IMG/VR virus record: IMGVR_UViG_3300027668_000008
Span: 124,001-188,000 of that record
Direction: 5' to 3' (one strand)
Length of the DNA stretch: 64,000 bases
In this document: one piece after another, positions 3,985-62,462 of the stretch
How the letters are laid out: every line of letters starts with the position of its first letter
Numbering within the stretch: position 1 is the first letter of the stretch
Notes under the pieces: generated by a model
What the model was told of the DNA's origin: nothing
Seen by the model: only the letters and a program-made list of their open reading frames with translations
The model's database searches: none
Translations under genes and position numbers: made by a program

Positions 3985-4061
3985 TGGCGCACCCTACAGG
4001 ACTCGAACCTATTACCTCTGGTTCCGCAAACCAACGCTCTATCCAGATGAGCTAAGGGTGC
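3985..4061 (-). tRNA. tRNA-Arg, anticodon GCG
   Basis: GCACCCT/AGGGTGC acceptor stem, A20, anticodon arm TTGGT-TTGCGGA-ACCAG, TTCGAGT T-loop, encoded CCA. Confidence 0.9.
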
Positions 4062-4072
4062 CTTTATAGTTT

Positions 4073-4148
4073 TGGTGGAGGATACAGGGATCGAACCTGC
4101 TACCTCCTGAATGCAAATCAGGCGCTCTCCCAGATGAGCTAATCCCCC
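4073..4148 (-). tRNA. tRNA-Ala, anticodon TGC
   Basis: GGGGGAT/ATCCTCC stem with G3:U70, arm CCTGA-TTTGCAT-TCAGG, encoded CCA. Confidence 0.95.
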
Positions 4149-4181
4149 AAAACTAAATTCTTTTTGTAACATACTAATACT

Positions 4182-4210
4182 ATAATATAACATTCAACGA
4201 GTGTTGTCAA
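4182..4210 (-). promoter_or_regulatory. sigma70-type promoter for tRNA-Ala/tRNA-Arg
   Basis: TTGACA-N17-TATTAT. Confidence 0.75.
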
Positions 4211-4222
4211 GAGCCATAAAAG

Positions 4223-4312
4223 TGGCGGAGAGACTGGGATTTGAACCCAGGAAAGAGTTGCCCCTTTGCCGGTTTAGTAAACCGGTGCTTTCAACCGCTC
4301 AGCCATCTCTCC
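4223..4312 (-). tRNA. tRNA-Ser (long variable arm), anticodon ACT
   Basis: GGAGAGA/TCTCTCC stem, G73, long variable arm AAAG-GGGCAACT-CTTT, arm CCGGT-TTACTAA-ACCGG, encoded CCA. Confidence 0.88.
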
Positions 4313-4321
4313 GGAGTATTT

Positions 4322-4525
4322 TTATTTAGGTACGATTTCAAAACACTTAACTAGTGCCTGCATATCAGTCAAACCAGCCGCTTTACATTCTGCGTATAAT
4401 TTCTTTCTAGCGCCGACTACTTCGTCTGGTGCTACTTTTATACTTTGCATCCTATTTGATTTTGCATTAGGATTCATGCCACGATATCTGGTATTATGTT
4501 TATTATTTTTGTTACGATCATTCAC
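4322..4525 (-). CDS. Small basic hypothetical protein between tRNAs
   Basis: 67-aa ORF, GTG start. Confidence 0.55.
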   Translation of the reverse strand: MNDRNKNNKHNTRYRGMNPNAKSNRMQSIKVAPDEVVGARKKLYAECKAAGLTDMQALVKCFEIVPK

Positions 4526-4541
4526 GCAATTTATTTTTCTG

Positions 4542-4617
4542 TGGTGCCGCTTCCCGGATTCGAACTGGGCACCTACTGATTACAAATCAGTTGCTCTACC
4601 AAATGAGCTAAAGCGGC
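4542..4617 (-). tRNA. tRNA-Thr, anticodon TGT
   Basis: GCCGCTT/AAGCGGC stem, arm ACTGA-TTTGTAA-TCAGT, encoded CCA. Confidence 0.95.
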
Positions 4618-13600: not shown

Positions 13601-14292
13601 TAGTCGCTCTGCGTAATGTCTATGTCAGAATTGGTGCCAACTGTTGTTAATTGTATTTTGTTGTCATAAATTCCACTTTGTGTAATGTCCACTGTAGTAC
13701 CTTCACCTGTATGATTATGTGTTAAACTATGTCCTGCACTATCTCCTGCGCCTGACATTATATAGTTCGCCGTGTTATCTACTGAACTGCCTAATGCATC
13801 ATTATCCATATCGATGTCTGCATCTGCGTTCGCGGCATTTACTGTTAGTGTGATAGTATCTTCGTTGCTAGTTGCTAAATCTATTGTTCCTACAAAGTTA
13901 GCCGATGATGCACTGGCTCCAATAGCAACTGTTACTGTTGCGTCATCGCCGACTACATCTATGCTCATACTTACTGTTTCACAATTAGAACTTGCACAAG
14001 TTAAAGCAACTGTGTTAGAGTTACCTGTTAAATCTATATTACCTGTGTAAGTAGTACCGTTAATAACTGTAGACACAACGTTACTGTTACCAACTTGATC
14101 AATATTAAATGTCATGCTGTTACCAGTTAAGGATATCGCTGTACTGCTGTTACCTGCCACGTTGTTCTGTCCGTCCTGTGTTATATCCAAGTTTAAATTA
14201 TTACCACTTTGTGTAATATAGATATCATTAGCATACACCGAACTTATAGAACAAACCAGAAACAAGAGCACATAAACTATTTTATTTGTCAT
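13600..14292 (-). CDS. Secreted curlin-like repeat protein
   Basis: Signal peptide then NDIYITQSGNNLNLDITQDGQNN; Gly/Asn/Gln beta-solenoid repeats. Confidence 0.8.
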   Translation of the reverse strand: MTNKIVYVLLFLVCSISSVYANDIYITQSGNNLNLDITQDGQNNVAGNSSTAISLTGNSMTFNIDQVGNSNVVSTVINGTTYTGNIDLTGNSNTVALTCASSNCETVSMSIDVVGDDATVTVAIGASASSANFVGTIDLATSNEDTITLTVNAANADADIDMDNDALGSSVDNTANYIMSGAGDSAGHSLTHNHTGEGTTVDITQSGIYDNKIQLTTVGTNSDIDITQSD

Positions 14293-15355
14293 TTATTTTC
14301 TCCGTCTGTTTCTGCCCTTTTAGTTTAGTTAACGTTTCCCATAGATACATATCAGCAGTGTTTTTAAAACAGTTGCCTCCTGCATTGCAAACGTTAAAGT
14401 CATCTCCCGGTGCTCCTTTTAGCATTTCACTTTCGTGCATAGTTGGGATTGAGTTAATGTCCGGTTTAGAAATAGGCACAGATTTTAATTTAGAACTTTG
14501 GAGAGTCGTATTTTTATCATCTGTATTAATTACTTCACCGGACTTATGGATTAACTTCGTAGTTTTTTGTGTCGTTTTCTTAAACTTCCACAAGCCCTTG
14601 ATTTCGCCTTCTTTGACGATCTCGACAATAGCCTGCTCAATAGCAAGTCTAACTGCCTGATTGGTAGGTTCATTAACTGCTGAACCTATCTCAATTTCTA
14701 ATGCTCTTGTACCTAAATCTAAAAATCTAAATACATCTGAGCTATCTTTATAACTTGCAATAGTCTTATCAACTGCAACCGACAGTAGTATTTCACCAGT
14801 TGATACACTAATAATTCTCATTGCCACAGATACTCTATCTGTTCTGTATTCTTTTGATGCTCCAATACCAAAGTATCTTGCACCTACACCGCCACTTTCA
14901 ATGTTGCTATCGTAACCTATAATAGCACCATCTAATAATAGTCCAGCAAATAACATAGGTTGTAATGCTAGTGCATCTTTACCTTCAAAATTTTCTCTTG
15001 TGCTTCTTATTAATTGTCTTTCTTTTACCAACGAGTCTAAACTAACACGTTCTAATACCTTAAACCATTTACCGCCTCCGGCTTGTTGCAATGCACGAAT
15101 CACATGACTCTCTGCACCTTGCGTTACTGCGGTACTTAATTGACTAAAATTTGTTGAAGGTTTACGTTGTCCTGTTTTATCTCCAAAGCCGTATAGTGCT
15201 ATGGTAATAATAGGTCCGTCGATTGGTGGTAAGTTTAGAAGTGCATTAACCCCTATTGGTATCGAAGCAGGTGGGTCGTATCTGACTTGCTTTACAGGGT
15301 TACCTGCACAAGCACCTAGTAACAATATGATGGATAATGCTACAAATATCCTCAT
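14282..15355 (-). CDS. csgG: Curli secretion channel CsgG (lipoprotein) with C-terminal extension
   Basis: Lipobox LLLGAC; FGDKTGQRKP, STAVTQGA, WFKVLERVSLDSLVKERQLIR, GAIIGYDSN, GVGARYFGIGA, GEILLSV. Confidence 0.95.
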   Translation of the reverse strand: MRIFVALSIILLLGACAGNPVKQVRYDPPASIPIGVNALLNLPPIDGPIITIALYGFGDKTGQRKPSTNFSQLSTAVTQGAESHVIRALQQAGGGKWFKVLERVSLDSLVKERQLIRSTRENFEGKDALALQPMLFAGLLLDGAIIGYDSNIESGGVGARYFGIGASKEYRTDRVSVAMRIISVSTGEILLSVAVDKTIASYKDSSDVFRFLDLGTRALEIEIGSAVNEPTNQAVRLAIEQAIVEIVKEGEIKGLWKFKKTTQKTTKLIHKSGEVINTDDKNTTLQSSKLKSVPISKPDINSIPTMHESEMLKGAPGDDFNVCNAGGNCFKNTADMYLWETLTKLKGQKQTEKINDK

Positions 15356-15358
15356 CCA

Positions 15359-15808
15359 TTAAAACCCGAAGCCACTTAATGGCACCACTAGTTCACTAAA
15401 TGAACCATCGGCTTCAGTTATCTGTACAGTAATTGTACTCGAAGATGTATCTTTAATCCAGTATATAGTTGCACCTTCGACAGTTGCAGTACCACTATTG
15501 GCACCAGTGTCAGAAAACATACTATCAACTAAATTTTTGGATAAGTTTGCGTAAATTCTTGATTCAACGTTTGCTAAGAATTTTGAAAGAGTTTCTTGGG
15601 CGGCATCTCTAACTGCTTGTCTTTCAGCCGCTTCTTTGGCTTTCTTTATTTCAGCCGCACGTTGGAATTGGAGTTGCTCTATACTTAAGACGTGTGTACT
15701 ATAACCTTTTCCACTAAAGGAAGGATTTTTAAATTCATGTGTTAAGTCGCTGGCGTATGCAGGCGTCATAACGAACATAGTCAAGGCTATAGTGATAAAA
15801 AATTTCAT
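15359..15808 (-). CDS. csgF: Curli assembly component CsgF
   Basis: Signal peptide then SDLTHEFKNPSFSG; ITVQITEADGSFSELVVP; directly upstream of csgG. Confidence 0.88.
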   Translation of the reverse strand: MKFFITIALTMFVMTPAYASDLTHEFKNPSFSGKGYSTHVLSIEQLQFQRAAEIKKAKEAAERQAVRDAAQETLSKFLANVESRIYANLSKNLVDSMFSDTGANSGTATVEGATIYWIKDTSSSTITVQITEADGSFSELVVPLSGFGF

Positions 15809-15828
15809 AATAATACGATCTCCATTAG

Positions 15829-15836
15829 TATTTATA
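15829..15836 (-). promoter_or_regulatory. TATAAATA late promoter of the csgF-csgG operon
   Basis: Exact T4 late consensus about 20 nt upstream of csgF. Confidence 0.7.
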
Positions 15837-15906
15837 ATTTATTCGATTAAATAAACCGACATTATTAAGGAAATCGTAAATATTTTTACACCTACATAAA
15901 TACTAA

Positions 15907-15968
15907 GGTATAGTAAGACGTTATTATACTGGACGGTAGTTTATAGCCCTTTACTACCGTCCTTTTAT
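15907..15968 (+). ncRNA. Candidate small RNA (hairpin plus terminator hairpin)
   Basis: TAAATA at 15897; hairpin GTATAGTAA-GACG-TTATTATAC; hairpin GGACGGTAGT/ACTACCGTCC followed by TTTT; no plus-strand ORF. Confidence 0.45.
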
Positions 15969-16205
15969 TTCTAAAACTTTCATTCTAGCAATGAGACGTG
16001 TTCTTCCCACACCCAAATATCTACTCGCGGCGGCAACTGACTTGTGCATTGTTAACGCCTCAGTTATCTCACTGGTTTCAATTTGTTTAAGTTTGTCTGG
16101 GAGGGTAGTGTCAAGGGATTCAATAGCAGAGCCTGGTGCTCCCCATATGTCGTCCATCATTTCGAACAGTACTGTCTGTTCATTTGTGAAAACGCCCTTG
16201 TTCAT
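15954..16205 (-). CDS. Stand-alone Fis-type HTH protein
   Basis: ITEALTMHKSVAAASRYLGVGRTRLIARMK matches the Fis/NtrC C-terminal HTH; ATG 16205 below TATAAATA 16211-16218. Confidence 0.75.
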   Translation of the reverse strand: MNKGVFTNEQTVLFEMMDDIWGAPGSAIESLDTTLPDKLKQIETSEITEALTMHKSVAAASRYLGVGRTRLIARMKVLEIKGR

Positions 16206-16253
16206 ACTAGTATTTATATACCGCATAAACAAAGGCGTTTCTAAGTGGTTCTG

Positions 16254-16304: not shown

Positions 16305-16523
16305 TTAGTTATGTTCTCCACGATAAATTTTACCGCCTTTAGAAACATAAGGAATGTCTCCACGACAAATACCTATGTCATGTAATTCTGCATCTGATAA
16401 CCTAGAAAGAGTTCTTAAAGTTGTTGCGTTTGCTCGGCGCTTTTTGTAAGCATCTTGTATTCCTAAAACATACTCTTTAATTGTGTTGCAAATTGCACAA
16501 ACATTTAGTGTTATAGTAGACAT
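16305..16523 (-). CDS. DUF1127 (YjiS-like) small protein
   Basis: RRANATTLRTLSRLSDAELHDIGICRGDI. Confidence 0.88.
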   Translation of the reverse strand: MSTITLNVCAICNTIKEYVLGIQDAYKKRRANATTLRTLSRLSDAELHDIGICRGDIPYVSKGGKIYRGEHN

Positions 16524-16705
16524 TATTTTAATTCCTTATTCTTTAGTGCCATCATAAGTGCTTTTGCTTCTTTATGATATCCCATTTGTGATAGTTGTGA
16601 CGCGGCTCTAATAGTACCTGCATTTTCGCCTAGATGTATTATTGCTGATAAAAACTTTCTTACTGCTTCGCAAAACGAACAGTAATATACTGATAATGTA
16701 TTCAT
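16523..16705 (-). CDS. Small protein, possibly divergent DUF1127-like
   Basis: Likely start ATG 16705; GTIRAASQLSQMGY; coupled to its neighbours. Confidence 0.6.
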   Translation of the reverse strand: MNTLSVYYCSFCEAVRKFLSAIIHLGENAGTIRAASQLSQMGYHKEAKALMMALKNKELK

Positions 16706-16706
16706 G

Positions 16707-16907
16707 TTATTGTGTGATCCCTGTTTCAAATTTATGTTTGTATCTGGGACCATTACCTGTCTGTTGCATAACTTCGTAAGCATATCTCCAGTCGTTTCCG
16801 TATTCTGTCTTTGCCCATAAGAGTAACTGATCGTCTTTCGCACCACGTGTAGGGGTGAATCGGACGTCAAGCCAACTCAAGATGGACGTATATAGCATTT
16901 GTGCCAT
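16707..16907 (-). CDS. Small conserved hypothetical protein (WAKTEY motif)
   Basis: 66 aa, AGGAG RBS, first gene after the structured leader. Confidence 0.75.
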   Translation of the reverse strand: MAQMLYTSILSWLDVRFTPTRGAKDDQLLLWAKTEYGNDWRYAYEVMQQTGNGPRYKHKFETGITQ

Positions 16908-16924
16908 TTGTCAATCTCCTAAGT

Positions 16925-17112
16925 ATAAAATATATATGATGCTTGAGGAAAGCAATACCCCGGAACTTCCCCGGCGGTGCGTGAACCTTTGGTTCCCGTC
17001 AGTCTTTTTAAAGCATAGCCAATGCTCTAGTCTTTCCTAGTGCCACTCTTTTTTTCTGAGCCGAGGTCGCTCTTGAATAAAAACAAACGAATGTTTGTGA
17101 TTTTTTTATTCA
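16925..17112 (-). ncRNA. Structured leader RNA with 3' pseudoknot (possibly manA-motif-like)
   Basis: Multiple hairpins and an H-type pseudoknot GGGG-TATTGCTT-TCC-TC-AAGCA, downstream of TATAAATA at 17117-17124. Confidence 0.6.
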
Positions 17113-17155
17113 ATGTTATTTATACAATAGGTCAGGATTACTGCCCTATTAGGAT

Positions 17156-17172
17156 TGCATACTCGTTATGCA
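17156..17172. promoter_or_regulatory. Palindrome TGCAT-N7-ATGCA, LysR-type (T-N11-A) box candidate
   Basis: Perfect inverted repeat upstream of the promoter of the DUF1127 operon. Confidence 0.4.
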
Positions 17173-17188
17173 TTTTTGTTATAATGGA

Positions 17189-18328
17189 TTACTCGCCTAT
17201 AGTTGAATTTTCATAGACTGTATTTAATTGATTTGCTACTTGAATAAATGTAGCACACTTCGAAAGTCGCTTTAACTTATTTGCTCCAACGTAAGTGCAG
17301 GCACTTCTGATGCCTCCTAGAATGTCTTGAATAGTTATGTCTACATCTCCGCGATAAGGTACTAGTGCAGTACGTCCTTCGCTACTACGGTAGTCTTTTA
17401 AGCCACTAAAGTGTTTTTCGTTGGCTGTTTTAGAACTCATACCGTAGAATTGCACAAACTTCTTTTCTTCTATCTTTCTAGTTGTACCAGTTGACATTTC
17501 ATTAGTCATATATTTTTTAGTAATTACTTCGCCACCGCCTTCATTATGTCCTGCTAACATACCGCCAAGCATAACAAAATCTGCTCCTCCGGCAAAAGCC
17601 TTAGCAACATCACCCGGGCAAGTACAGCCACCATCAGCAATGATATGTCCACCTAATCCGTGGGCCGCATCAGCACATTCCATAACTGCTGAAAGTTGAG
17701 GATATCCAACACCAGTTTTAAGTCTAGTAGTACAAACACTGCCAGGACCAATACCAACTTTAACAATATCGGCTCCATTTAATATCAATTCCTGTGTTTG
17801 GTCTGCCGTAACTACGTTACCGGCAATAATAACAATTTCTGGATAACTTTTCCTAAACGCACTAATAAAGTCTAAAAAGCGTTCACTATACCCGTTTGCT
17901 ACATCAATACAAACATATTTTAATTTGTTACCTGTTTGCTCGTATACATCACGAAACTTTTGTTGGTCGTGGTCTAAAATTCCTATGCTCATTGCTACAT
18001 TATTACTACGTTCGTTACCTTCTACGTCAAAGTAACTTACTAGTTCTGTAACTGTGTAAGTTTTAACTAGACAGGTAAAAATTCTTTGTTTTGCTAACTT
18101 ATCAGCCATAGCAAGTGTGCCAACACCGTCCATGTTTGAAGCCATAAGTGGTATGCCTTTAAAGTCGCCATGCTCTGAACGTCTATTTAATCCTGGTTCG
18201 CTTGGCTTATAATGACGATAAGTAAACCTACGGTGTAAATCTACTTCTTTCCGTGAACCCAATGTACTACGTTTAGGTCTCATTAATACACTAGCATAAT
18301 CTAGTTTGATATCTGATTCTATTCTCAT
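17189..18328 (-). CDS. guaC: GMP reductase
   Basis: PLMASNMDGVGT, CIDVANGYSE, IIAGNVVT, VKVGIGPGSVCTTR, ADGGCTCPGDVAKAF, FYGMSS, YRSSEG. Confidence 0.95.
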   Translation of the reverse strand: MRIESDIKLDYASVLMRPKRSTLGSRKEVDLHRRFTYRHYKPSEPGLNRRSEHGDFKGIPLMASNMDGVGTLAMADKLAKQRIFTCLVKTYTVTELVSYFDVEGNERSNNVAMSIGILDHDQQKFRDVYEQTGNKLKYVCIDVANGYSERFLDFISAFRKSYPEIVIIAGNVVTADQTQELILNGADIVKVGIGPGSVCTTRLKTGVGYPQLSAVMECADAAHGLGGHIIADGGCTCPGDVAKAFAGGADFVMLGGMLAGHNEGGGEVITKKYMTNEMSTGTTRKIEEKKFVQFYGMSSKTANEKHFSGLKDYRSSEGRTALVPYRGDVDITIQDILGGIRSACTYVGANKLKRLSKCATFIQVANQLNTVYENSTIGE

Positions 18329-26479: not shown

Positions 26480-26745
26480 ATGCAACGATTTCTGTTGCTA
26501 GGTACGTTGCCAACCCCCACGTGCTTATTTTACTAAGCCGCTAATGCCATTTCTGGCTGATAATTGTTATTTGCAATTATAAAGTTTCTTCGCGATAACG
26601 GTGCTTAGATCCCGAGAACTCCACTAACTCTAGTAATTACCTGTCGATCCTATTCATCCCCATATGAAAAATCTGTTGTATTTGGTGGAGATGCCGGGAT
26701 TCGCACCCGGGTCCAGTTTAACTTTTGAATTGCTTCAACGTTCTA
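26480..26745 (-). ncRNA. ssrA: Circularly permuted two-piece tmRNA (alphaproteobacterial type), tag ANNNYQPEMALAA
   Basis: Acceptor piece ends with T-arm and CATCTCCACCA at 26683; 21-nt spacer; coding piece starts GGGGATGAATAGGATCGAC at 26661 (G3:U70); tag ORF 26574-26533; CCTAGCAACAGAA near the 3' end. Confidence 0.93.
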
Positions 26746-26749
26746 AGTA

Positions 26750-26780
26750 TATTTATACACTATTCACTTGACTTTGTCAA
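26750..26780 (-). promoter_or_regulatory. Hybrid sigma70 / late promoter of tmRNA
   Basis: TTGACA-N17-TATAAA, where the -10 is part of TATAAATA. Confidence 0.8.
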
Positions 26781-26865
26781 CCAAATAATATACAAATAAA
26801 GTACTAATATTAAAAATAAAAGATAAGTATTCTATAAAAGCAAAATACATCAACTAAAGGTAATT

Positions 26866-61059: not shown

Positions 61060-62085
61060 TTATGCTTGGCGTGAACGAATCATTGCTAAAATGTCTTCTG
61101 CATTTTGAGATGATCCACCAGCAGGTGCACTTGGCTCAGGTGTTGCAACAGGTGTTGCTACTGCCTCAGTTTGTACAGGTGCTGATATTGGTGCCGCCGG
61201 AGTTGGTGTTGGTTCTGCAAACGGTGCCGCAGTAGGTGTTGCCACTGGTGTTGCCACTGGTGTTGCTACTGGTGCCTTGTTAGCCGATTCCGGTAATTGT
61301 ACTCCTGAAGGACGGAAGTATTGCGAATACTTCTCGGAATCATAAGCCTTACCGTCAACACTATCTTCAAACATTTGTTTGATAATGCCTAGTTCTGCTT
61401 CGTTCGGCTTCTTTGGTAAGAAGTCGTTCAAATCATACAGACCATAAGTTTCGATTGCTTTTTGTTCTTCCTCAGTTAGAGCAGTTTCTTTCCTTGCCCA
61501 GTTAGAAGTAGAATAATCTGCATATCCGCCTTTACTAGTTTTTAGTACACGGAAGTCGATACCCTTTGTATAATCAGTAGGTAATTCTTCCATATCAGGA
61601 TCCATTAAACTTGCTTTAATAATATTAAAGAGTTGTGGTCCCATAATAAACCTACGAATTGGATTCTCAGGTGCATCTTCGTCTAATGCCGAATCGCGAA
61701 CAATACCTTGGAAAACATAAGATTTCTTTTTCCAATATTTACGACCCATGTCCTCTAAAGAACTGTCTTTAAACCACGGACGTACTTCCGCTAGTATTGG
61801 ACAAGAACCTACTGGTTCCCACATTTCCATACAAGGTACTTGTACAGTAATTGGCTTACTGTCCATTTGACCTTTAATGCCATTGAACGGTAAACGAATC
61901 ATCGCTCGCTCTGCCCAAAAGAATGTGTTTTGATTGTTGGAGTCTGGAAGGAATCGCAGTGTACTACTTGTTCCTTCTGCTATGTTCCAGTGTGGATAAA
62001 TTGCGTTGTCGCCGCCGCGGTTTCCGCCTTGTGAACGGGTATCCTGTGCTTGTAGTTTTGCACGGATTTCTGCTAATGATGCCAT
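61060..62085 (-). CDS. Single-stranded DNA-binding protein (gp32-like)
   Basis: LRFLPD, VPCMEMW..CPI, RKYWKKKSY; Pro/Ala linker; EDILAMIRSR tail. Confidence 0.92.
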   Translation of the reverse strand: MASLAEIRAKLQAQDTRSQGGNRGGDNAIYPHWNIAEGTSSTLRFLPDSNNQNTFFWAERAMIRLPFNGIKGQMDSKPITVQVPCMEMWEPVGSCPILAEVRPWFKDSSLEDMGRKYWKKKSYVFQGIVRDSALDEDAPENPIRRFIMGPQLFNIIKASLMDPDMEELPTDYTKGIDFRVLKTSKGGYADYSTSNWARKETALTEEEQKAIETYGLYDLNDFLPKKPNEAELGIIKQMFEDSVDGKAYDSEKYSQYFRPSGVQLPESANKAPVATPVATPVATPTAAPFAEPTPTPAAPISAPVQTEAVATPVATPEPSAPAGGSSQNAEDILAMIRSRQA

Positions 62086-62239: not shown

Positions 62240-62462
62240 TTACAACTAACTGTTTGGAAGGACTTGCTGTGAACTCACCTCCAACTTTCTAATAGCAGAT
62301 CACATCTAATATTGCAAGGTTTCGACGTGAAATTTACTAGAACCACCGCTTCTTAAACCAACCCACTTGGGCGCCTAAAAAGATTAAGTGTGCGTTACCC
62401 CTCTGCCGAAGAGTTATTCCGCCACAAACACAAAAGAATTATAAGCCCTTTTGTTTTAGTTG
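62240..62462 (-). ncRNA. Unassigned ~220-nt structured RNA
   Basis: Own promoter TTGACT-N17-TATATT (62471-62499); no ORF; GC-richer than its flanks; multiple helices. Confidence 0.65.

What the first reader, a model, noticed from the sequence alone, without database searches (positions are those of the whole stretch)
16925..17124. ~190-nt structured leader RNA ending in a pseudoknot just upstream of an RBS
On the minus strand after TATAAATA: long hairpin TTGAATAAAAA..ACAAAC/GTTTGT..TTTTATTCAA; GAGC/GCTC; CTAG/CTAG; AGCAT/ATGCT; GAACC/GGTTC; CCGG/CCGG; then GGGG-TATTGCTT-TCC-TC-AAGCA (pseudoknot). It is GC-rich in an AT-rich genome. The architecture is reminiscent of the orphan manA riboswitch candidate of marine phages, but I cannot confirm that.
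Basis: partly seen in the sequence, partly recalled or inferred. Interest (0 to 1): 0.65.

Follow-up and report, generated by a model that had tools for sequence, protein, structure and literature searches.

The report
New structured leader RNA of marine phages
The flagged stretch is a real, previously uncatalogued structured RNA leader, shared by well over a hundred uncultured marine T4-like phage contigs, that sits between a late promoter and an operon of tiny proteins; it is not the manA motif and what it binds is still unknown.

Summary
The structure is more than chance: MFE z = -2.9, and a covariance model finds the same leader in 84 of 87 related sources, always on the coding strand just upstream of the same small-protein gene. 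In that alignment 21 of 28 pairs show compensatory changes. More than 120 viral contigs carry its 20-nt core, giving 113 distinct leaders. The RNA is modular. It has an optional 5' hairpin and an optional H-type pseudoknot with an A-rich strand, supported by covariation from few events. It then has 1-4 short hairpins with an N-A-N-A-G-A loop closed by G-C and flanked by [U/A]GAC, and an almost invariant terminal hairpin with a CCU loop 9-22 nt before the SD. No Rfam 15 family matches, manA included. Exact-match contigs from three marine RNA libraries cover it. Most likely it is a cis-acting translational operator and stabiliser read by a protein, not a metabolite riboswitch, but the mechanism is inferred. 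Cultured relatives HTVC008M and Melnitz lack the leader.

The parts
17117..17124 (-). T4-type late promoter box TATAAATA; the predicted transcript start is about 17111.
   Evidence: Sequence. 99 of 104 related leaders have (N)ATAAATA, 73 of them exactly TATAAATA, at a median of 176 nt before the ATG. Its role as a late promoter rests on established knowledge of T4-like phages; it was not tested here.
17073..17113 (-). M0: 5'-terminal long hairpin (UUGAAUAAAAA..ACAAAC/GUUUGU..UUUUAUUCAA). This is a variable module.
   Evidence: It forms in the MFE. L097 has a hairpin of different sequence at the same place, and other relatives carry unrelated 5' hairpins.
17046..17072 (-). M1: H-type pseudoknot. 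Stem 1 is GAGC (17072-17069) with GCUC (17061-17058). Loop CUC (17065-17063) pairs with GAG (17048-17046) across the A-rich strand AGAAAAAAA (17057-17049). This is an optional module.
   Evidence: There are 16 distinct instances. Stem 1 alternates between GAGC/GCUC and AAGC/GCUU. Stem 2 is CUCA/UGAG, UUCA/UGAA, UCCA/UGGA or CCUCA/UGAGG, plus a shifted CACC/GGUG. On an unfitted MAFFT alignment 95.9% of cells pair against at most 43% when slid, and 3 pairs have double changes.
17027..17040 (-). Pa: unit hairpin CUAG-GAAAGA-CUAG, preceded by GGCA. This is the repeated N-A-N-A-G-A unit.
   Evidence: Helix 1 of the model has all 5 pairs with double-sided changes. There are 183 such units in 110 leaders; the closing pair is G-C in 169 of 183, and more than 25 stem sequences occur.
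17012..17026 (-). Pb: hairpin AGCAU-UGGCU-AUGCU.
   Evidence: Helix 2 has all 5 pairs with double-sided changes and 95.4% of cells paired. RNAalifold also predicts it on the MAFFT alignment.
16980..16998 (-). Pc: hairpin C-GGGAACC-AAA-GGUUCAC-G, preceded by the linker UUAAAAAGACUGA (17011-16999).
   Evidence: Helix 3 has 5 of 8 pairs with double-sided changes and up to 5 pair types per position.
16960..16974 (-). Pd: hairpin CCGG-GGAAGUU-CCGG. It lies inside the block GCACCGCCGGGGAAGUUCCGGGGUAU (16980-16955), which is invariant in 22 close leaders.
   Evidence: The block is invariant. In more distant leaders the hairpin is replaced by a unit hairpin such as CCGG-AAAAGA-CCGG, and 4 of 4 pairs show double changes.
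16938..16958 (-). Pe: terminal hairpin GG-U-AU-U-GCUU-UCCUC-AAGC-AU-C. Its loop carries an invariant CCU that resembles the anti-SD.
   Evidence: The 20-nt core GGTATTGCTNNCCTYAAGCA occurs in more than 120 viral contigs, once per contig. Loop CCU and the 5' GG are invariant in 96 of 96 leaders. Diverged types keep the helix as GGAUGC/GUAUCC or GGAUUC/GAAUCC.
16905..16937 (-). G-poor spacer (16937-16921), SD AGGAGA (16920-16915) and start codon ATG (16907-16905).
   Evidence: Sequence. The distance from the end of Pe to the SD is 9-22 nt in 104 leaders.
16707..16907 (-). First gene of the operon: a 66-aa protein of the 'AKTEYGNDWRYAY' family, the constant partner of the leader.
   Evidence: It is present behind 80 of 84 leaders that have enough downstream sequence. 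There are 231 viral hits and only 1 in GTDB genomes, at the end of a MAG contig. It has no Pfam, PHROG or NCBIfam family. AF2 predicts two helices at pLDDT 67.
16305..16705 (-). Further tiny genes of the operon: a ~60-aa 'GxxRAAxxLSxxGY' protein (16526-16705) and a 72-aa DUF1127 protein (16305-16523).
   Evidence: DUF1127 matches at E 6.8e-13. Operon composition in relatives is given. One 541-nt exact-match RNA-library contig spans 16559-17099, joining the leader to the ORFs.

Best explanation
The stretch is the 5' leader, about 204 nt from about 17111 to 16908 on the minus strand, of an operon of very small proteins in an uncultured marine T4-like jumbo myophage. The operon sits behind a late-promoter box. 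The leader belongs to a phage-specific RNA family that is not in Rfam.

Shown here:
- It folds into a string of independent modules: a 5' hairpin, a small H-type pseudoknot with an A-rich third strand, and several short hairpins.
- One or more of those hairpins carry an N-A-N-A-G-A loop closed by G-C and flanked by [U/A]GAC.
- A nearly invariant terminal hairpin with a CCU loop lies 9-22 nt before the Shine-Dalgarno sequence.

Inferred:
- It acts in cis on the translation and stability of the operon mRNA.
- The repeated unit hairpins are recognition sites for an RNA-binding protein of the phage or the host. The operon's own products are candidates, the DUF1127 protein among them.
- The terminal hairpin sets ribosome access to the SD, either through its CCU loop pairing with the SD's GG or through the bound protein.
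- The 5' hairpin and pseudoknot protect the 5' end of the mRNA.
- It is a protein-responsive operator rather than a metabolite-sensing riboswitch.
For: Real and structured:
- MFE z = -2.9.
- 84 model hits in 87 sources, all on the coding strand directly upstream of the small ORF.
- 21 of 28 pairs are compensatory, and 94% of cells pair against 74% in shuffles and at most 44% when slid.
- G.U outnumbers A.C 45 to 12.
- Pseudoknot covariation.

A leader rather than a free gene:
- (N)ATAAATA lies upstream in 99 of 104 leaders.
- The terminal hairpin is always 9-22 nt before GGAG.
- There is no convincing terminator.
- A 541-nt exact-match RNA-library contig spans the leader and the ORFs.
- Conservation is highest next to the RBS: the 20-nt core occurs in more than 120 contigs and a 26-nt block is invariant.

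Protein-binding reading:
- The same hairpin unit occurs 1-4 times per leader. Its loop, closing pair and flank are conserved while its stem is free.
- Whole modules are present or absent between relatives. That pattern is typical of repeated protein sites and unusual for a metabolite aptamer.
- The window's operon encodes a DUF1127 protein. A DUF1127 protein, CcaF1, binds hairpins of RNAs co-transcribed with its gene in Rhodobacter (PMC8034643).
Against: - No binder is identified.
- The number of units does not track any operon protein. The type-A block with DUF1127 association (23 of 36 against 10 of 48) is confounded by shared ancestry.
- DUF1127 was found in only 33 of 84 operons, a lower bound from a strict regex.
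- The constant partner, the AKTEY protein, is not notably basic by inspection. Its model is a plain two-helix hairpin of modest confidence.
- Nearest-neighbour folding does not consistently pair the SD with the terminal hairpin. That hairpin is the main partner in 26 of 104 leaders, and the loop-SD duplex averages -5.5 kcal/mol against -4.3 +/- 2.0 with shuffled loops.
- The RNA evidence comes from assembled contigs at low depth. It shows presence in RNA libraries, not transcript ends or strand.
- The fitted alignment leans towards the model structure.
Confidence: 0.5

Rival explanations
1. It is a new riboswitch class. The minimal conserved core, [U/A]GAC plus one unit hairpin plus GG plus the terminal hairpin (about 45 nt), or the M1 pseudoknot, binds a small molecule and gates the adjacent SD.
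For: - There is extreme sequence conservation next to the RBS.
- The H-type pseudoknot with an A-rich strand has the topology of small pseudoknot aptamers such as preQ1-I and SAM-II (own knowledge).
- Tandem hairpins with conserved loops just before an SD are how the guanidine-II riboswitch is built (own knowledge).
- The 5' GG, the loop CCU and the SD GG could form mutually exclusive pairings.
Against: - The number of unit hairpins varies from 1 to 4, and M1 is absent from most leaders (26 of 84 have it).
- No Rfam aptamer matches, even at E <= 10 on 61-141-nt sub-windows.
- The downstream genes are tiny proteins of unknown function with no metabolic link.
- No alternative pairing is supported by covariation.
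Confidence: 0.17
2. The leader is mainly a precursor of a trans-acting RNA. It would be cut off the mRNA and would act through its pyrimidine-rich anti-SD-like loop on host or phage mRNAs, or as a decoy that titrates a host RNA-binding protein. This would be a phage counterpart of the alphaproteobacterial CcsR ('cuckoo') RNA / DUF1127 module.
For: - CcsR RNAs are multi-hairpin RNAs in the 5' or 3' UTR of DUF1127 genes. They carry anti-SD loops and are bound by the DUF1127 protein (PMC8034643).
- The window's operon contains a DUF1127 gene, and the terminal loop is UCCUC.
- Repeated hairpins with a shared loop resemble sponge RNAs.
- Short exact contigs covering only the leader occur in two RNA libraries: 16918-17085 and 16947-17120.
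Against: - Only one CCU loop is present, and it always lies at a fixed short distance from its own SD.
- There is no terminator between the leader and the ORF.
- One RNA contig joins the leader to the ORFs.
- DUF1127 is not obligatory.
- No Rfam family matches.
- Contig ends at 2-5x depth are not RNA ends.
Confidence: 0.12
3. The hairpins are purely structural: generic barriers to 5'-end-dependent RNase attack, or insulators that keep the RBS context constant, with no specific binder or signal.
For: - The leader is densely structured, with G-poor unpaired linkers.
- The variable 5' modules look interchangeable.
- The SD is left unpaired in the window's MFE.
Against: Generic stabilisers do not need these features:
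- invariant loops, closing pairs and flanks;
- a 26-nt block identical across phages whose first-gene protein is only about 40-55% identical;
- a 20-nt core kept in more than 120 contigs.
Confidence: 0.13
4. The conservation acts at the DNA level, for example as promoter or regulator sites or a packaging or recombination signal, or reflects coding on the opposite strand (ORFs 16855-17040 and 17040-17216 on the plus strand).
For: Mechanical ORFs of 58-61 aa overlap the region on the plus strand. The plus strand also folds well, with z = -2.4.
Against: - Compensatory changes keep pairing rather than sequence.
- G.U outnumbers A.C 45 to 12, which points to the minus strand as RNA.
- Modules come and go, with length differences that are not kept in frame.
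- All 84 model hits are co-oriented with the downstream gene.
Confidence: 0.03

Closest known systems
manA RNA motif (Rfam RF01745), an orphan riboswitch candidate of marine bacteria and T4-like cyanophages
   Same: Both are found in marine T4-like phages, as a multi-stem 5'-UTR element with a proposed pseudoknot and an unknown ligand (PMC2864571).
   Different: The covariance model does not match here at any threshold tried. The architecture differs, being a string of independent short hairpins rather than manA's nested multi-stem fold. The gene context also differs: tiny unknown proteins instead of mannose/fructose, nucleotide, ibpA or photosynthesis genes.
CcsR / 'cuckoo' RNAs with DUF1127 (CcaF1) in CIN1 loci of Alphaproteobacteria
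   Same: Both are multi-hairpin RNAs co-transcribed with small DUF1127 protein genes, in the 5' or 3' UTR. Both have a pyrimidine-rich loop resembling the anti-SD. The CcsR hairpins are bound by the DUF1127 protein (PMC8034643).
   Different: Here only one loop is pyrimidine-rich (UCCUC, not CCUCCUCCC); the repeated loops are purine-rich N-A-N-A-G-A. DUF1127 was found in 33 of 84 operons. The constant partner is a different, phage-specific protein. No Rfam match was found.
Autogenous translational operators of T4-type phages (for example the gene 32 mRNA leader with its 5' pseudoknot)
   Same: Both are phage mRNA leaders with an H-type pseudoknot upstream and protein-controlled access to the RBS (own knowledge of T4 biology).
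   Different: No sequence or model similarity was tested or seen. The T4 gene 32 operator relies on an unstructured A/U-rich tract, whereas this leader is a chain of hairpins with a conserved loop. The binder here is unknown.
Repeated-hairpin protein-binding RNAs (lambda boxB/N-type hairpins; CsrB/RsmZ-type sponges)
   Same: Both have short hairpins whose purine-rich loop, closing pair and flank are conserved while the stem is free, present in a variable number of copies (own knowledge).
   Different: The loop here is a hexaloop N-A-N-A-G-A closed by G-C. It is not the GNRA-like pentaloop of boxB, nor a GGA motif, since GGA is not conserved. The element is a leader fixed to one operon and occurs once per genome.
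Small H-type pseudoknot aptamers (preQ1-I, SAM-II) and the tandem-hairpin guanidine-II riboswitch
   Same: M1 has a 4-bp stem, a loop-to-tail helix and an 8-9-nt A-rich strand, like preQ1-I. Tandem hairpins with conserved loops just before an SD resemble guanidine-II (own knowledge).
   Different: No covariance-model match was found, even on short sub-windows. M1 is optional and lies about 130 nt from the SD. The number of unit hairpins is not fixed.

Membership tests
manA RNA (RF01745) | Match to the Rfam covariance model at or above its gathering score (55.2 bits). | tested here: not met
   There is no hit at the locus at the gathering score or at E <= 10. The genome-wide RF01745 scan hits only window 62247-62452, at 22.9 bits.
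manA RNA (RF01745) | Location in the 5' UTR of genes for mannose/fructose metabolism, nucleotide synthesis, ibpA or photosynthesis (PMC2864571). | tested here: not met
   The downstream gene is a 66-aa protein with no Pfam, PHROG or NCBIfam family. The GMP-reductase-like gene lies upstream, and the leader travels with the downstream gene in relatives.
manA RNA (RF01745) | Occurrence in marine metagenomes and T4-like phages. | tested here: met
   The host record is a 306-kb marine virus contig. The relatives are IMG/VR marine viral contigs, and the CsgG neighbour is 53-56% identical to those of HTVC008M and Melnitz.
CcsR/cuckoo RNA - DUF1127 (CIN1) module | Units of two hairpins, each with a CCUCCUCCC anti-SD loop. 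| tested here: not met
   Only the terminal hairpin has a pyrimidine loop (N-C-C-U-Y). All the repeated loops are N-A-N-A-G-A.
CcsR/cuckoo RNA - DUF1127 (CIN1) module | Co-transcription with a DUF1127 protein gene. | tested here: inconclusive
   DUF1127 is the third gene in the window and was found in 33 of 84 relatives' operons by a strict regex. Co-transcription is supported only by a contig that reaches 16559, short of the DUF1127 gene.
CcsR/cuckoo RNA - DUF1127 (CIN1) module | The RNA hairpins are bound by the DUF1127 protein. | not testable with these tools
   This needs a gel shift or co-immunoprecipitation.
Metabolite riboswitch (generic) | A single aptamer of fixed architecture, conserved across representatives. 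| tested here: inconclusive
   The number and presence of modules vary: 1-4 unit hairpins, and M1 in 26 of 84 leaders. However, a minimal core of about 45 nt (flank, one unit hairpin, terminal hairpin) is universal.
Metabolite riboswitch (generic) | Ligand-dependent structural switch coupled to an expression platform. | not testable with these tools
   This needs in-line probing and reporter assays. Thermodynamic folding gives no consistent partner for the SD.
Phage autogenous translational operator (T4 gene 32 type) | The leader is bound by the product of the regulated gene, which represses its translation. | not testable with these tools
   The context fits only in outline: a pseudoknot, proximity to the RBS and a constant gene partner. 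No binding data exist.

The most novel reading that the evidence does not exclude
This may be a phage-encoded riboregulatory module of a new type. In this reading the repeated N-A-N-A-G-A hairpins are docking sites for one of the operon's own tiny proteins, a phage analogue of the CcaF1-CcsR pair. The processed leader, with its anti-SD-like CCU loop, would then also act in trans on the translation or RNA turnover of the host late in infection of abundant marine bacteria. Alternatively, the 45-nt core may be a new riboswitch class with tandem-hairpin logic.
Probability: 0.2. Interest if true: 0.8.

Novelty: new variant of a known kind. Interest (0 to 1): 0.6.

Why it matters
Structured cis-regulatory RNAs of phages are few, and almost none are known from the T4-like myophages related to those that infect abundant marine bacteria such as SAR11 and OM43. 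This leader is widespread: more than 120 viral contigs and 113 distinct variants. It is present in ocean RNA libraries from several studies and is absent from Rfam 15 and from 50,697 deposited phage genomes. Its repeated-unit design gives a clear handle for finding the factor that reads it. That factor may be a new RNA-binding small protein, possibly linking DUF1127-type proteins to phage biology, or a new ligand. The leader also marks a conserved operon of tiny proteins behind a late-promoter box, none of which has a known function.

Tried and rejected
- blastn ('distant') of the 701-nt region and of the 116-nt core, and tblastn of the 66-aa protein, against 50,697 deposited phage genomes gave no match.
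- Rfam at the gathering score and at E <= 10 on the locus and on two sub-windows gave only chance-level rows: SpF39 at E 3.5, CRISPR-DR43 at 4.2, and Flavi_CRE at 3.5-6. The Flavi_CRE row merely shares a CNNG-GAAAGA-CNNG hairpin.
- A generic regex for the unit hairpin over the whole genome found 31 hits against about 13 in shuffles, mostly inside genes. With the GAC flank it found 5 against 1. The unit is therefore not a genome-wide repeat.
- Weak model hits elsewhere in the genome (E 0.05 and 0.2) and in HTVC008M and Melnitz (about 18 bits) are just one hairpin plus a generic AAGGAGAAAAAAATG RBS in front of unrelated genes.
- SD sequestration tested by partition-function folding gave a mean SD P(unpaired) of 0.41 but no consistent partner. 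The loop-SD duplex is only about 1.2 kcal/mol better than with shuffled loops. This was rejected as evidence either way.
- The long-range helix AGGAAAG:CUUUCCU in the window's MFE is not conserved on inspection. Many relatives have GAUAGA or AAAAGA loops that cannot form it.
- The AF2 model of the first-gene protein has pLDDT 67 and two helices. It was judged too plain and too uncertain for a fold search. The ESM Atlas feature search gave no usable hit.
- Associations between RNA modules and operon proteins are weak and confounded by shared ancestry.
- The terminator-like call at 16974-16960 is the Pd hairpin without a real U tract, so it was not taken as a terminator.
- The costly protein searches were not run, because the question concerns the RNA and the family scans were already blank.

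Full report
**Setting.** The window is bases 124001-188000 of a 306.7-kb IMG/VR virus record with 36% GC. It carries a tRNA cluster and a permuted two-piece tmRNA. Its CsgG/CsgF genes are 53-56% identical to those of Pelagibacter phage HTVC008M and the OM43 phage Melnitz. That combination has been described for marine T4-like myophages (PMC9004378; PMC7029224).

The finding lies in a 280-nt gap on the minus strand. Upstream is an IMPDH/GMP-reductase-like gene (17189-18328). Downstream are a 66-aa ORF (16707-16907), a ~60-aa ORF, a DUF1127 gene (16305-16523), an HTH_8 gene, and then csgF and csgG.

**Observation.** The RNA strand folds to -54.2 kcal/mol, against -41.9 +/- 4.2 for shuffles (z = -2.9). 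The structured core has 51% GC in a 36% GC genome.

**Relatives.**
- The 66-aa protein (motif AKTEYGNDWRYAY) has 231 relatives in viral contigs. It has one in 185,579 species genomes, at the end of a MAG contig.
- It has no relative in 50,697 deposited phage genomes.
- In all relatives the region upstream of this gene resembles the window's leader, most strongly in its 3' half.
- Pooling gave 113 distinct leaders.

**Structure and covariation.**
- A MAFFT alignment of 22 window-like cores shows freely changing stems beside a 26-nt invariant block, GCACCGCCGGGGAAGUUCCGGGGUAU. RNAalifold on that alignment already finds compensatory pairs.
- A covariance model with five hairpins (R1) finds one strong copy in the phage's own genome (124 bits).
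- R1 finds 84 hits in 87 sources, all co-oriented with and directly upstream of the small gene.
- On the fitted alignment 94.4% of cells pair, against 74.1% in shuffles and at most 44% when partners are slid. Twenty-one of 28 pairs show double-sided changes, with up to five pair types per position.
- G.U outnumbers A.C 45 to 12, which points to the minus strand as the RNA.
- The fitted alignment leans towards the model, but an alignment-free tally agrees with it. There are 183 unit hairpins in 110 leaders with more than 25 different stem sequences. The closing pair is G-C in 169 of 183. The loops are AAAAGA, GAAAGA, GAUAGA, CAAAGA and similar. The 5' flank is UGAC, AGAC or UGGC in most. Each leader has 1-4 units.

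**Pseudoknot.**
- The 5' module GAGC-GACCUCG-GCUC-AGAAAAAAA-GAG (17072-17046) recurs in 16 distinct forms.
- Stem 1 alternates between G-C and A-U at one pair.
- The loop-to-tail helix appears as CUCA/UGAG, UUCA/UGAA, UCCA/UGGA or CCUCA/UGAGG, plus a shifted CACC/GGUG.
- On an unfitted alignment 95.9% of cells pair, against at most 43% when slid. The independent events are few, so this is good but not overwhelming support.
The GG and the loop CCU are invariant in 96 of 96 leaders.
- The alternative partner of that GG, a 3' CC, is present in 59 of 96. It clearly pairs in the diverged types (GGAUGC/GUAUCC and GGAUUC/GAAUCC).
- Neither reading can be decided here.

**Promoter and expression.**
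- (N)ATAAATA precedes 99 of 104 leaders, at a median of 176 nt from the ATG. Sixteen relatives also have a sigma-70-like promoter just upstream.
- Eighteen marine RNA libraries from about ten studies hold parts of the locus.
- In the four laid, exact-match contigs cover 16559-17099, 16918-17085 and 16947-17120. These come from three runs of three studies.
- None bridges 17120-17160. Diverged copies of the core and of M1 also appear.
- These are low-depth contigs. They show presence in RNA libraries and continuity between leader and ORF, but not transcript ends or strand.

**Known families.**
- No Rfam 15 family matches at the gathering score or at E <= 10, on the locus or on its sub-modules.
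- manA does not match here. Its only match in the genome is below threshold and elsewhere.
- Literature searches found no description of this leader.
- HTVC008M and Melnitz lack it.

**Mechanism.**
- *Shown:* a modular, conserved, strand-specific RNA structure fixed between a late-promoter box and the RBS of one operon.
- *Inferred:* cis control of translation and stability through a trans-acting reader of the repeated unit hairpins and the terminal hairpin.
- *In favour of a protein reader:* the units vary in copy number while their loops, closing pairs and flanks stay constant, and whole modules can be absent. In addition, DUF1127 proteins bind hairpins of RNAs co-transcribed with them in Alphaproteobacteria (PMC8034643).
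- *Against it, or open:* no binder is identified, DUF1127 is not obligatory, no module-protein association is informative, and folding gives no consistent SD partner.
- *Rivals kept:* a riboswitch reading (a 45-nt universal core, tandem-hairpin logic, or M1), a processed trans-acting RNA, and a purely structural role.

**Verdict.** The 'structured leader' reading is supported. The manA reading is rejected. The pseudoknot is relocated to the 5' module. This is a new RNA family of a known general kind, with an unknown reader.

Noticed in passing
window 62247-62452 (-): There is a sub-threshold manA-like RNA here (RF01745, 22.9 bits against a cut-off of 55.2; E 6e-4 in the local search). It lies in a 432-nt gap upstream of ORF 61060-62085. 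It matches manA's first hairpin, the outer long-range helix, the GAAUAA...GUAA hairpin and the last hairpin, but lacks the two internal stems. The flanking ORFs have no Pfam family.
   Followed up: partly
window 17126-17172 (-): Two conserved elements lie upstream of the late-promoter box. One is the inverted repeat TGCAT-N7-ATGCA (17172-17156); related forms such as TTGCA-N9-TGCAA and GCAAG-N5-CTTGC occur in relatives. The other is the hairpin AAUAGGGCAG..CUGACCUAUU (17150-17126). In the window and some relatives that hairpin lies upstream of TATAAATA; in others it lies downstream of it. Sixteen relatives also have a sigma-70-like promoter (TTGAYH-N16-18-TAKAWT) just before the late box. This suggests two transcripts with different 5' ends.
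   Followed up: partly
relatives, e.g. L098:1501-2400, L295:7788-7985, L029:4485-5400: Different tiny proteins of these operons (the AKTEY, DUF1127 and 'DLxDLE' families) share two features. One is an N-terminus of the form M-x-x-x-L-x-x-L-V-x-M-F-G. The other, in 33 of 84 operons, is a C-terminal tail N-L-[KR]-G-W-V. A common targeting or docking signal is possible. The window's own three small proteins lack the tail.
   Followed up: no
window 26481-26799 (-) and 3988-4617 (-): The window holds a permuted two-piece (alpha-type) tmRNA gene (112.7 and 107 bits) and a cluster of four tRNA genes. This has been reported for Melnitz-like and pelagimyophage genomes.
   Followed up: no
window 14282-16232 (-): csgG, csgF and a small Fis-type HTH_8 protein gene follow the small-protein operon directly. 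The CsgG is 53-56% identical to those of HTVC008M and Melnitz, but those cultured phages lack both the leader and the AKTEY protein.
   Followed up: partly
window 17120-17160: No RNA-library contig from the four runs laid bridges this stretch. Exact contigs end at 17160/17182 on the upstream-gene side and at 17120/17099/17085 on the leader side. This fits a transcript boundary at the late-promoter box, but depth is only 2-5x, so the gap proves nothing.
   Followed up: no
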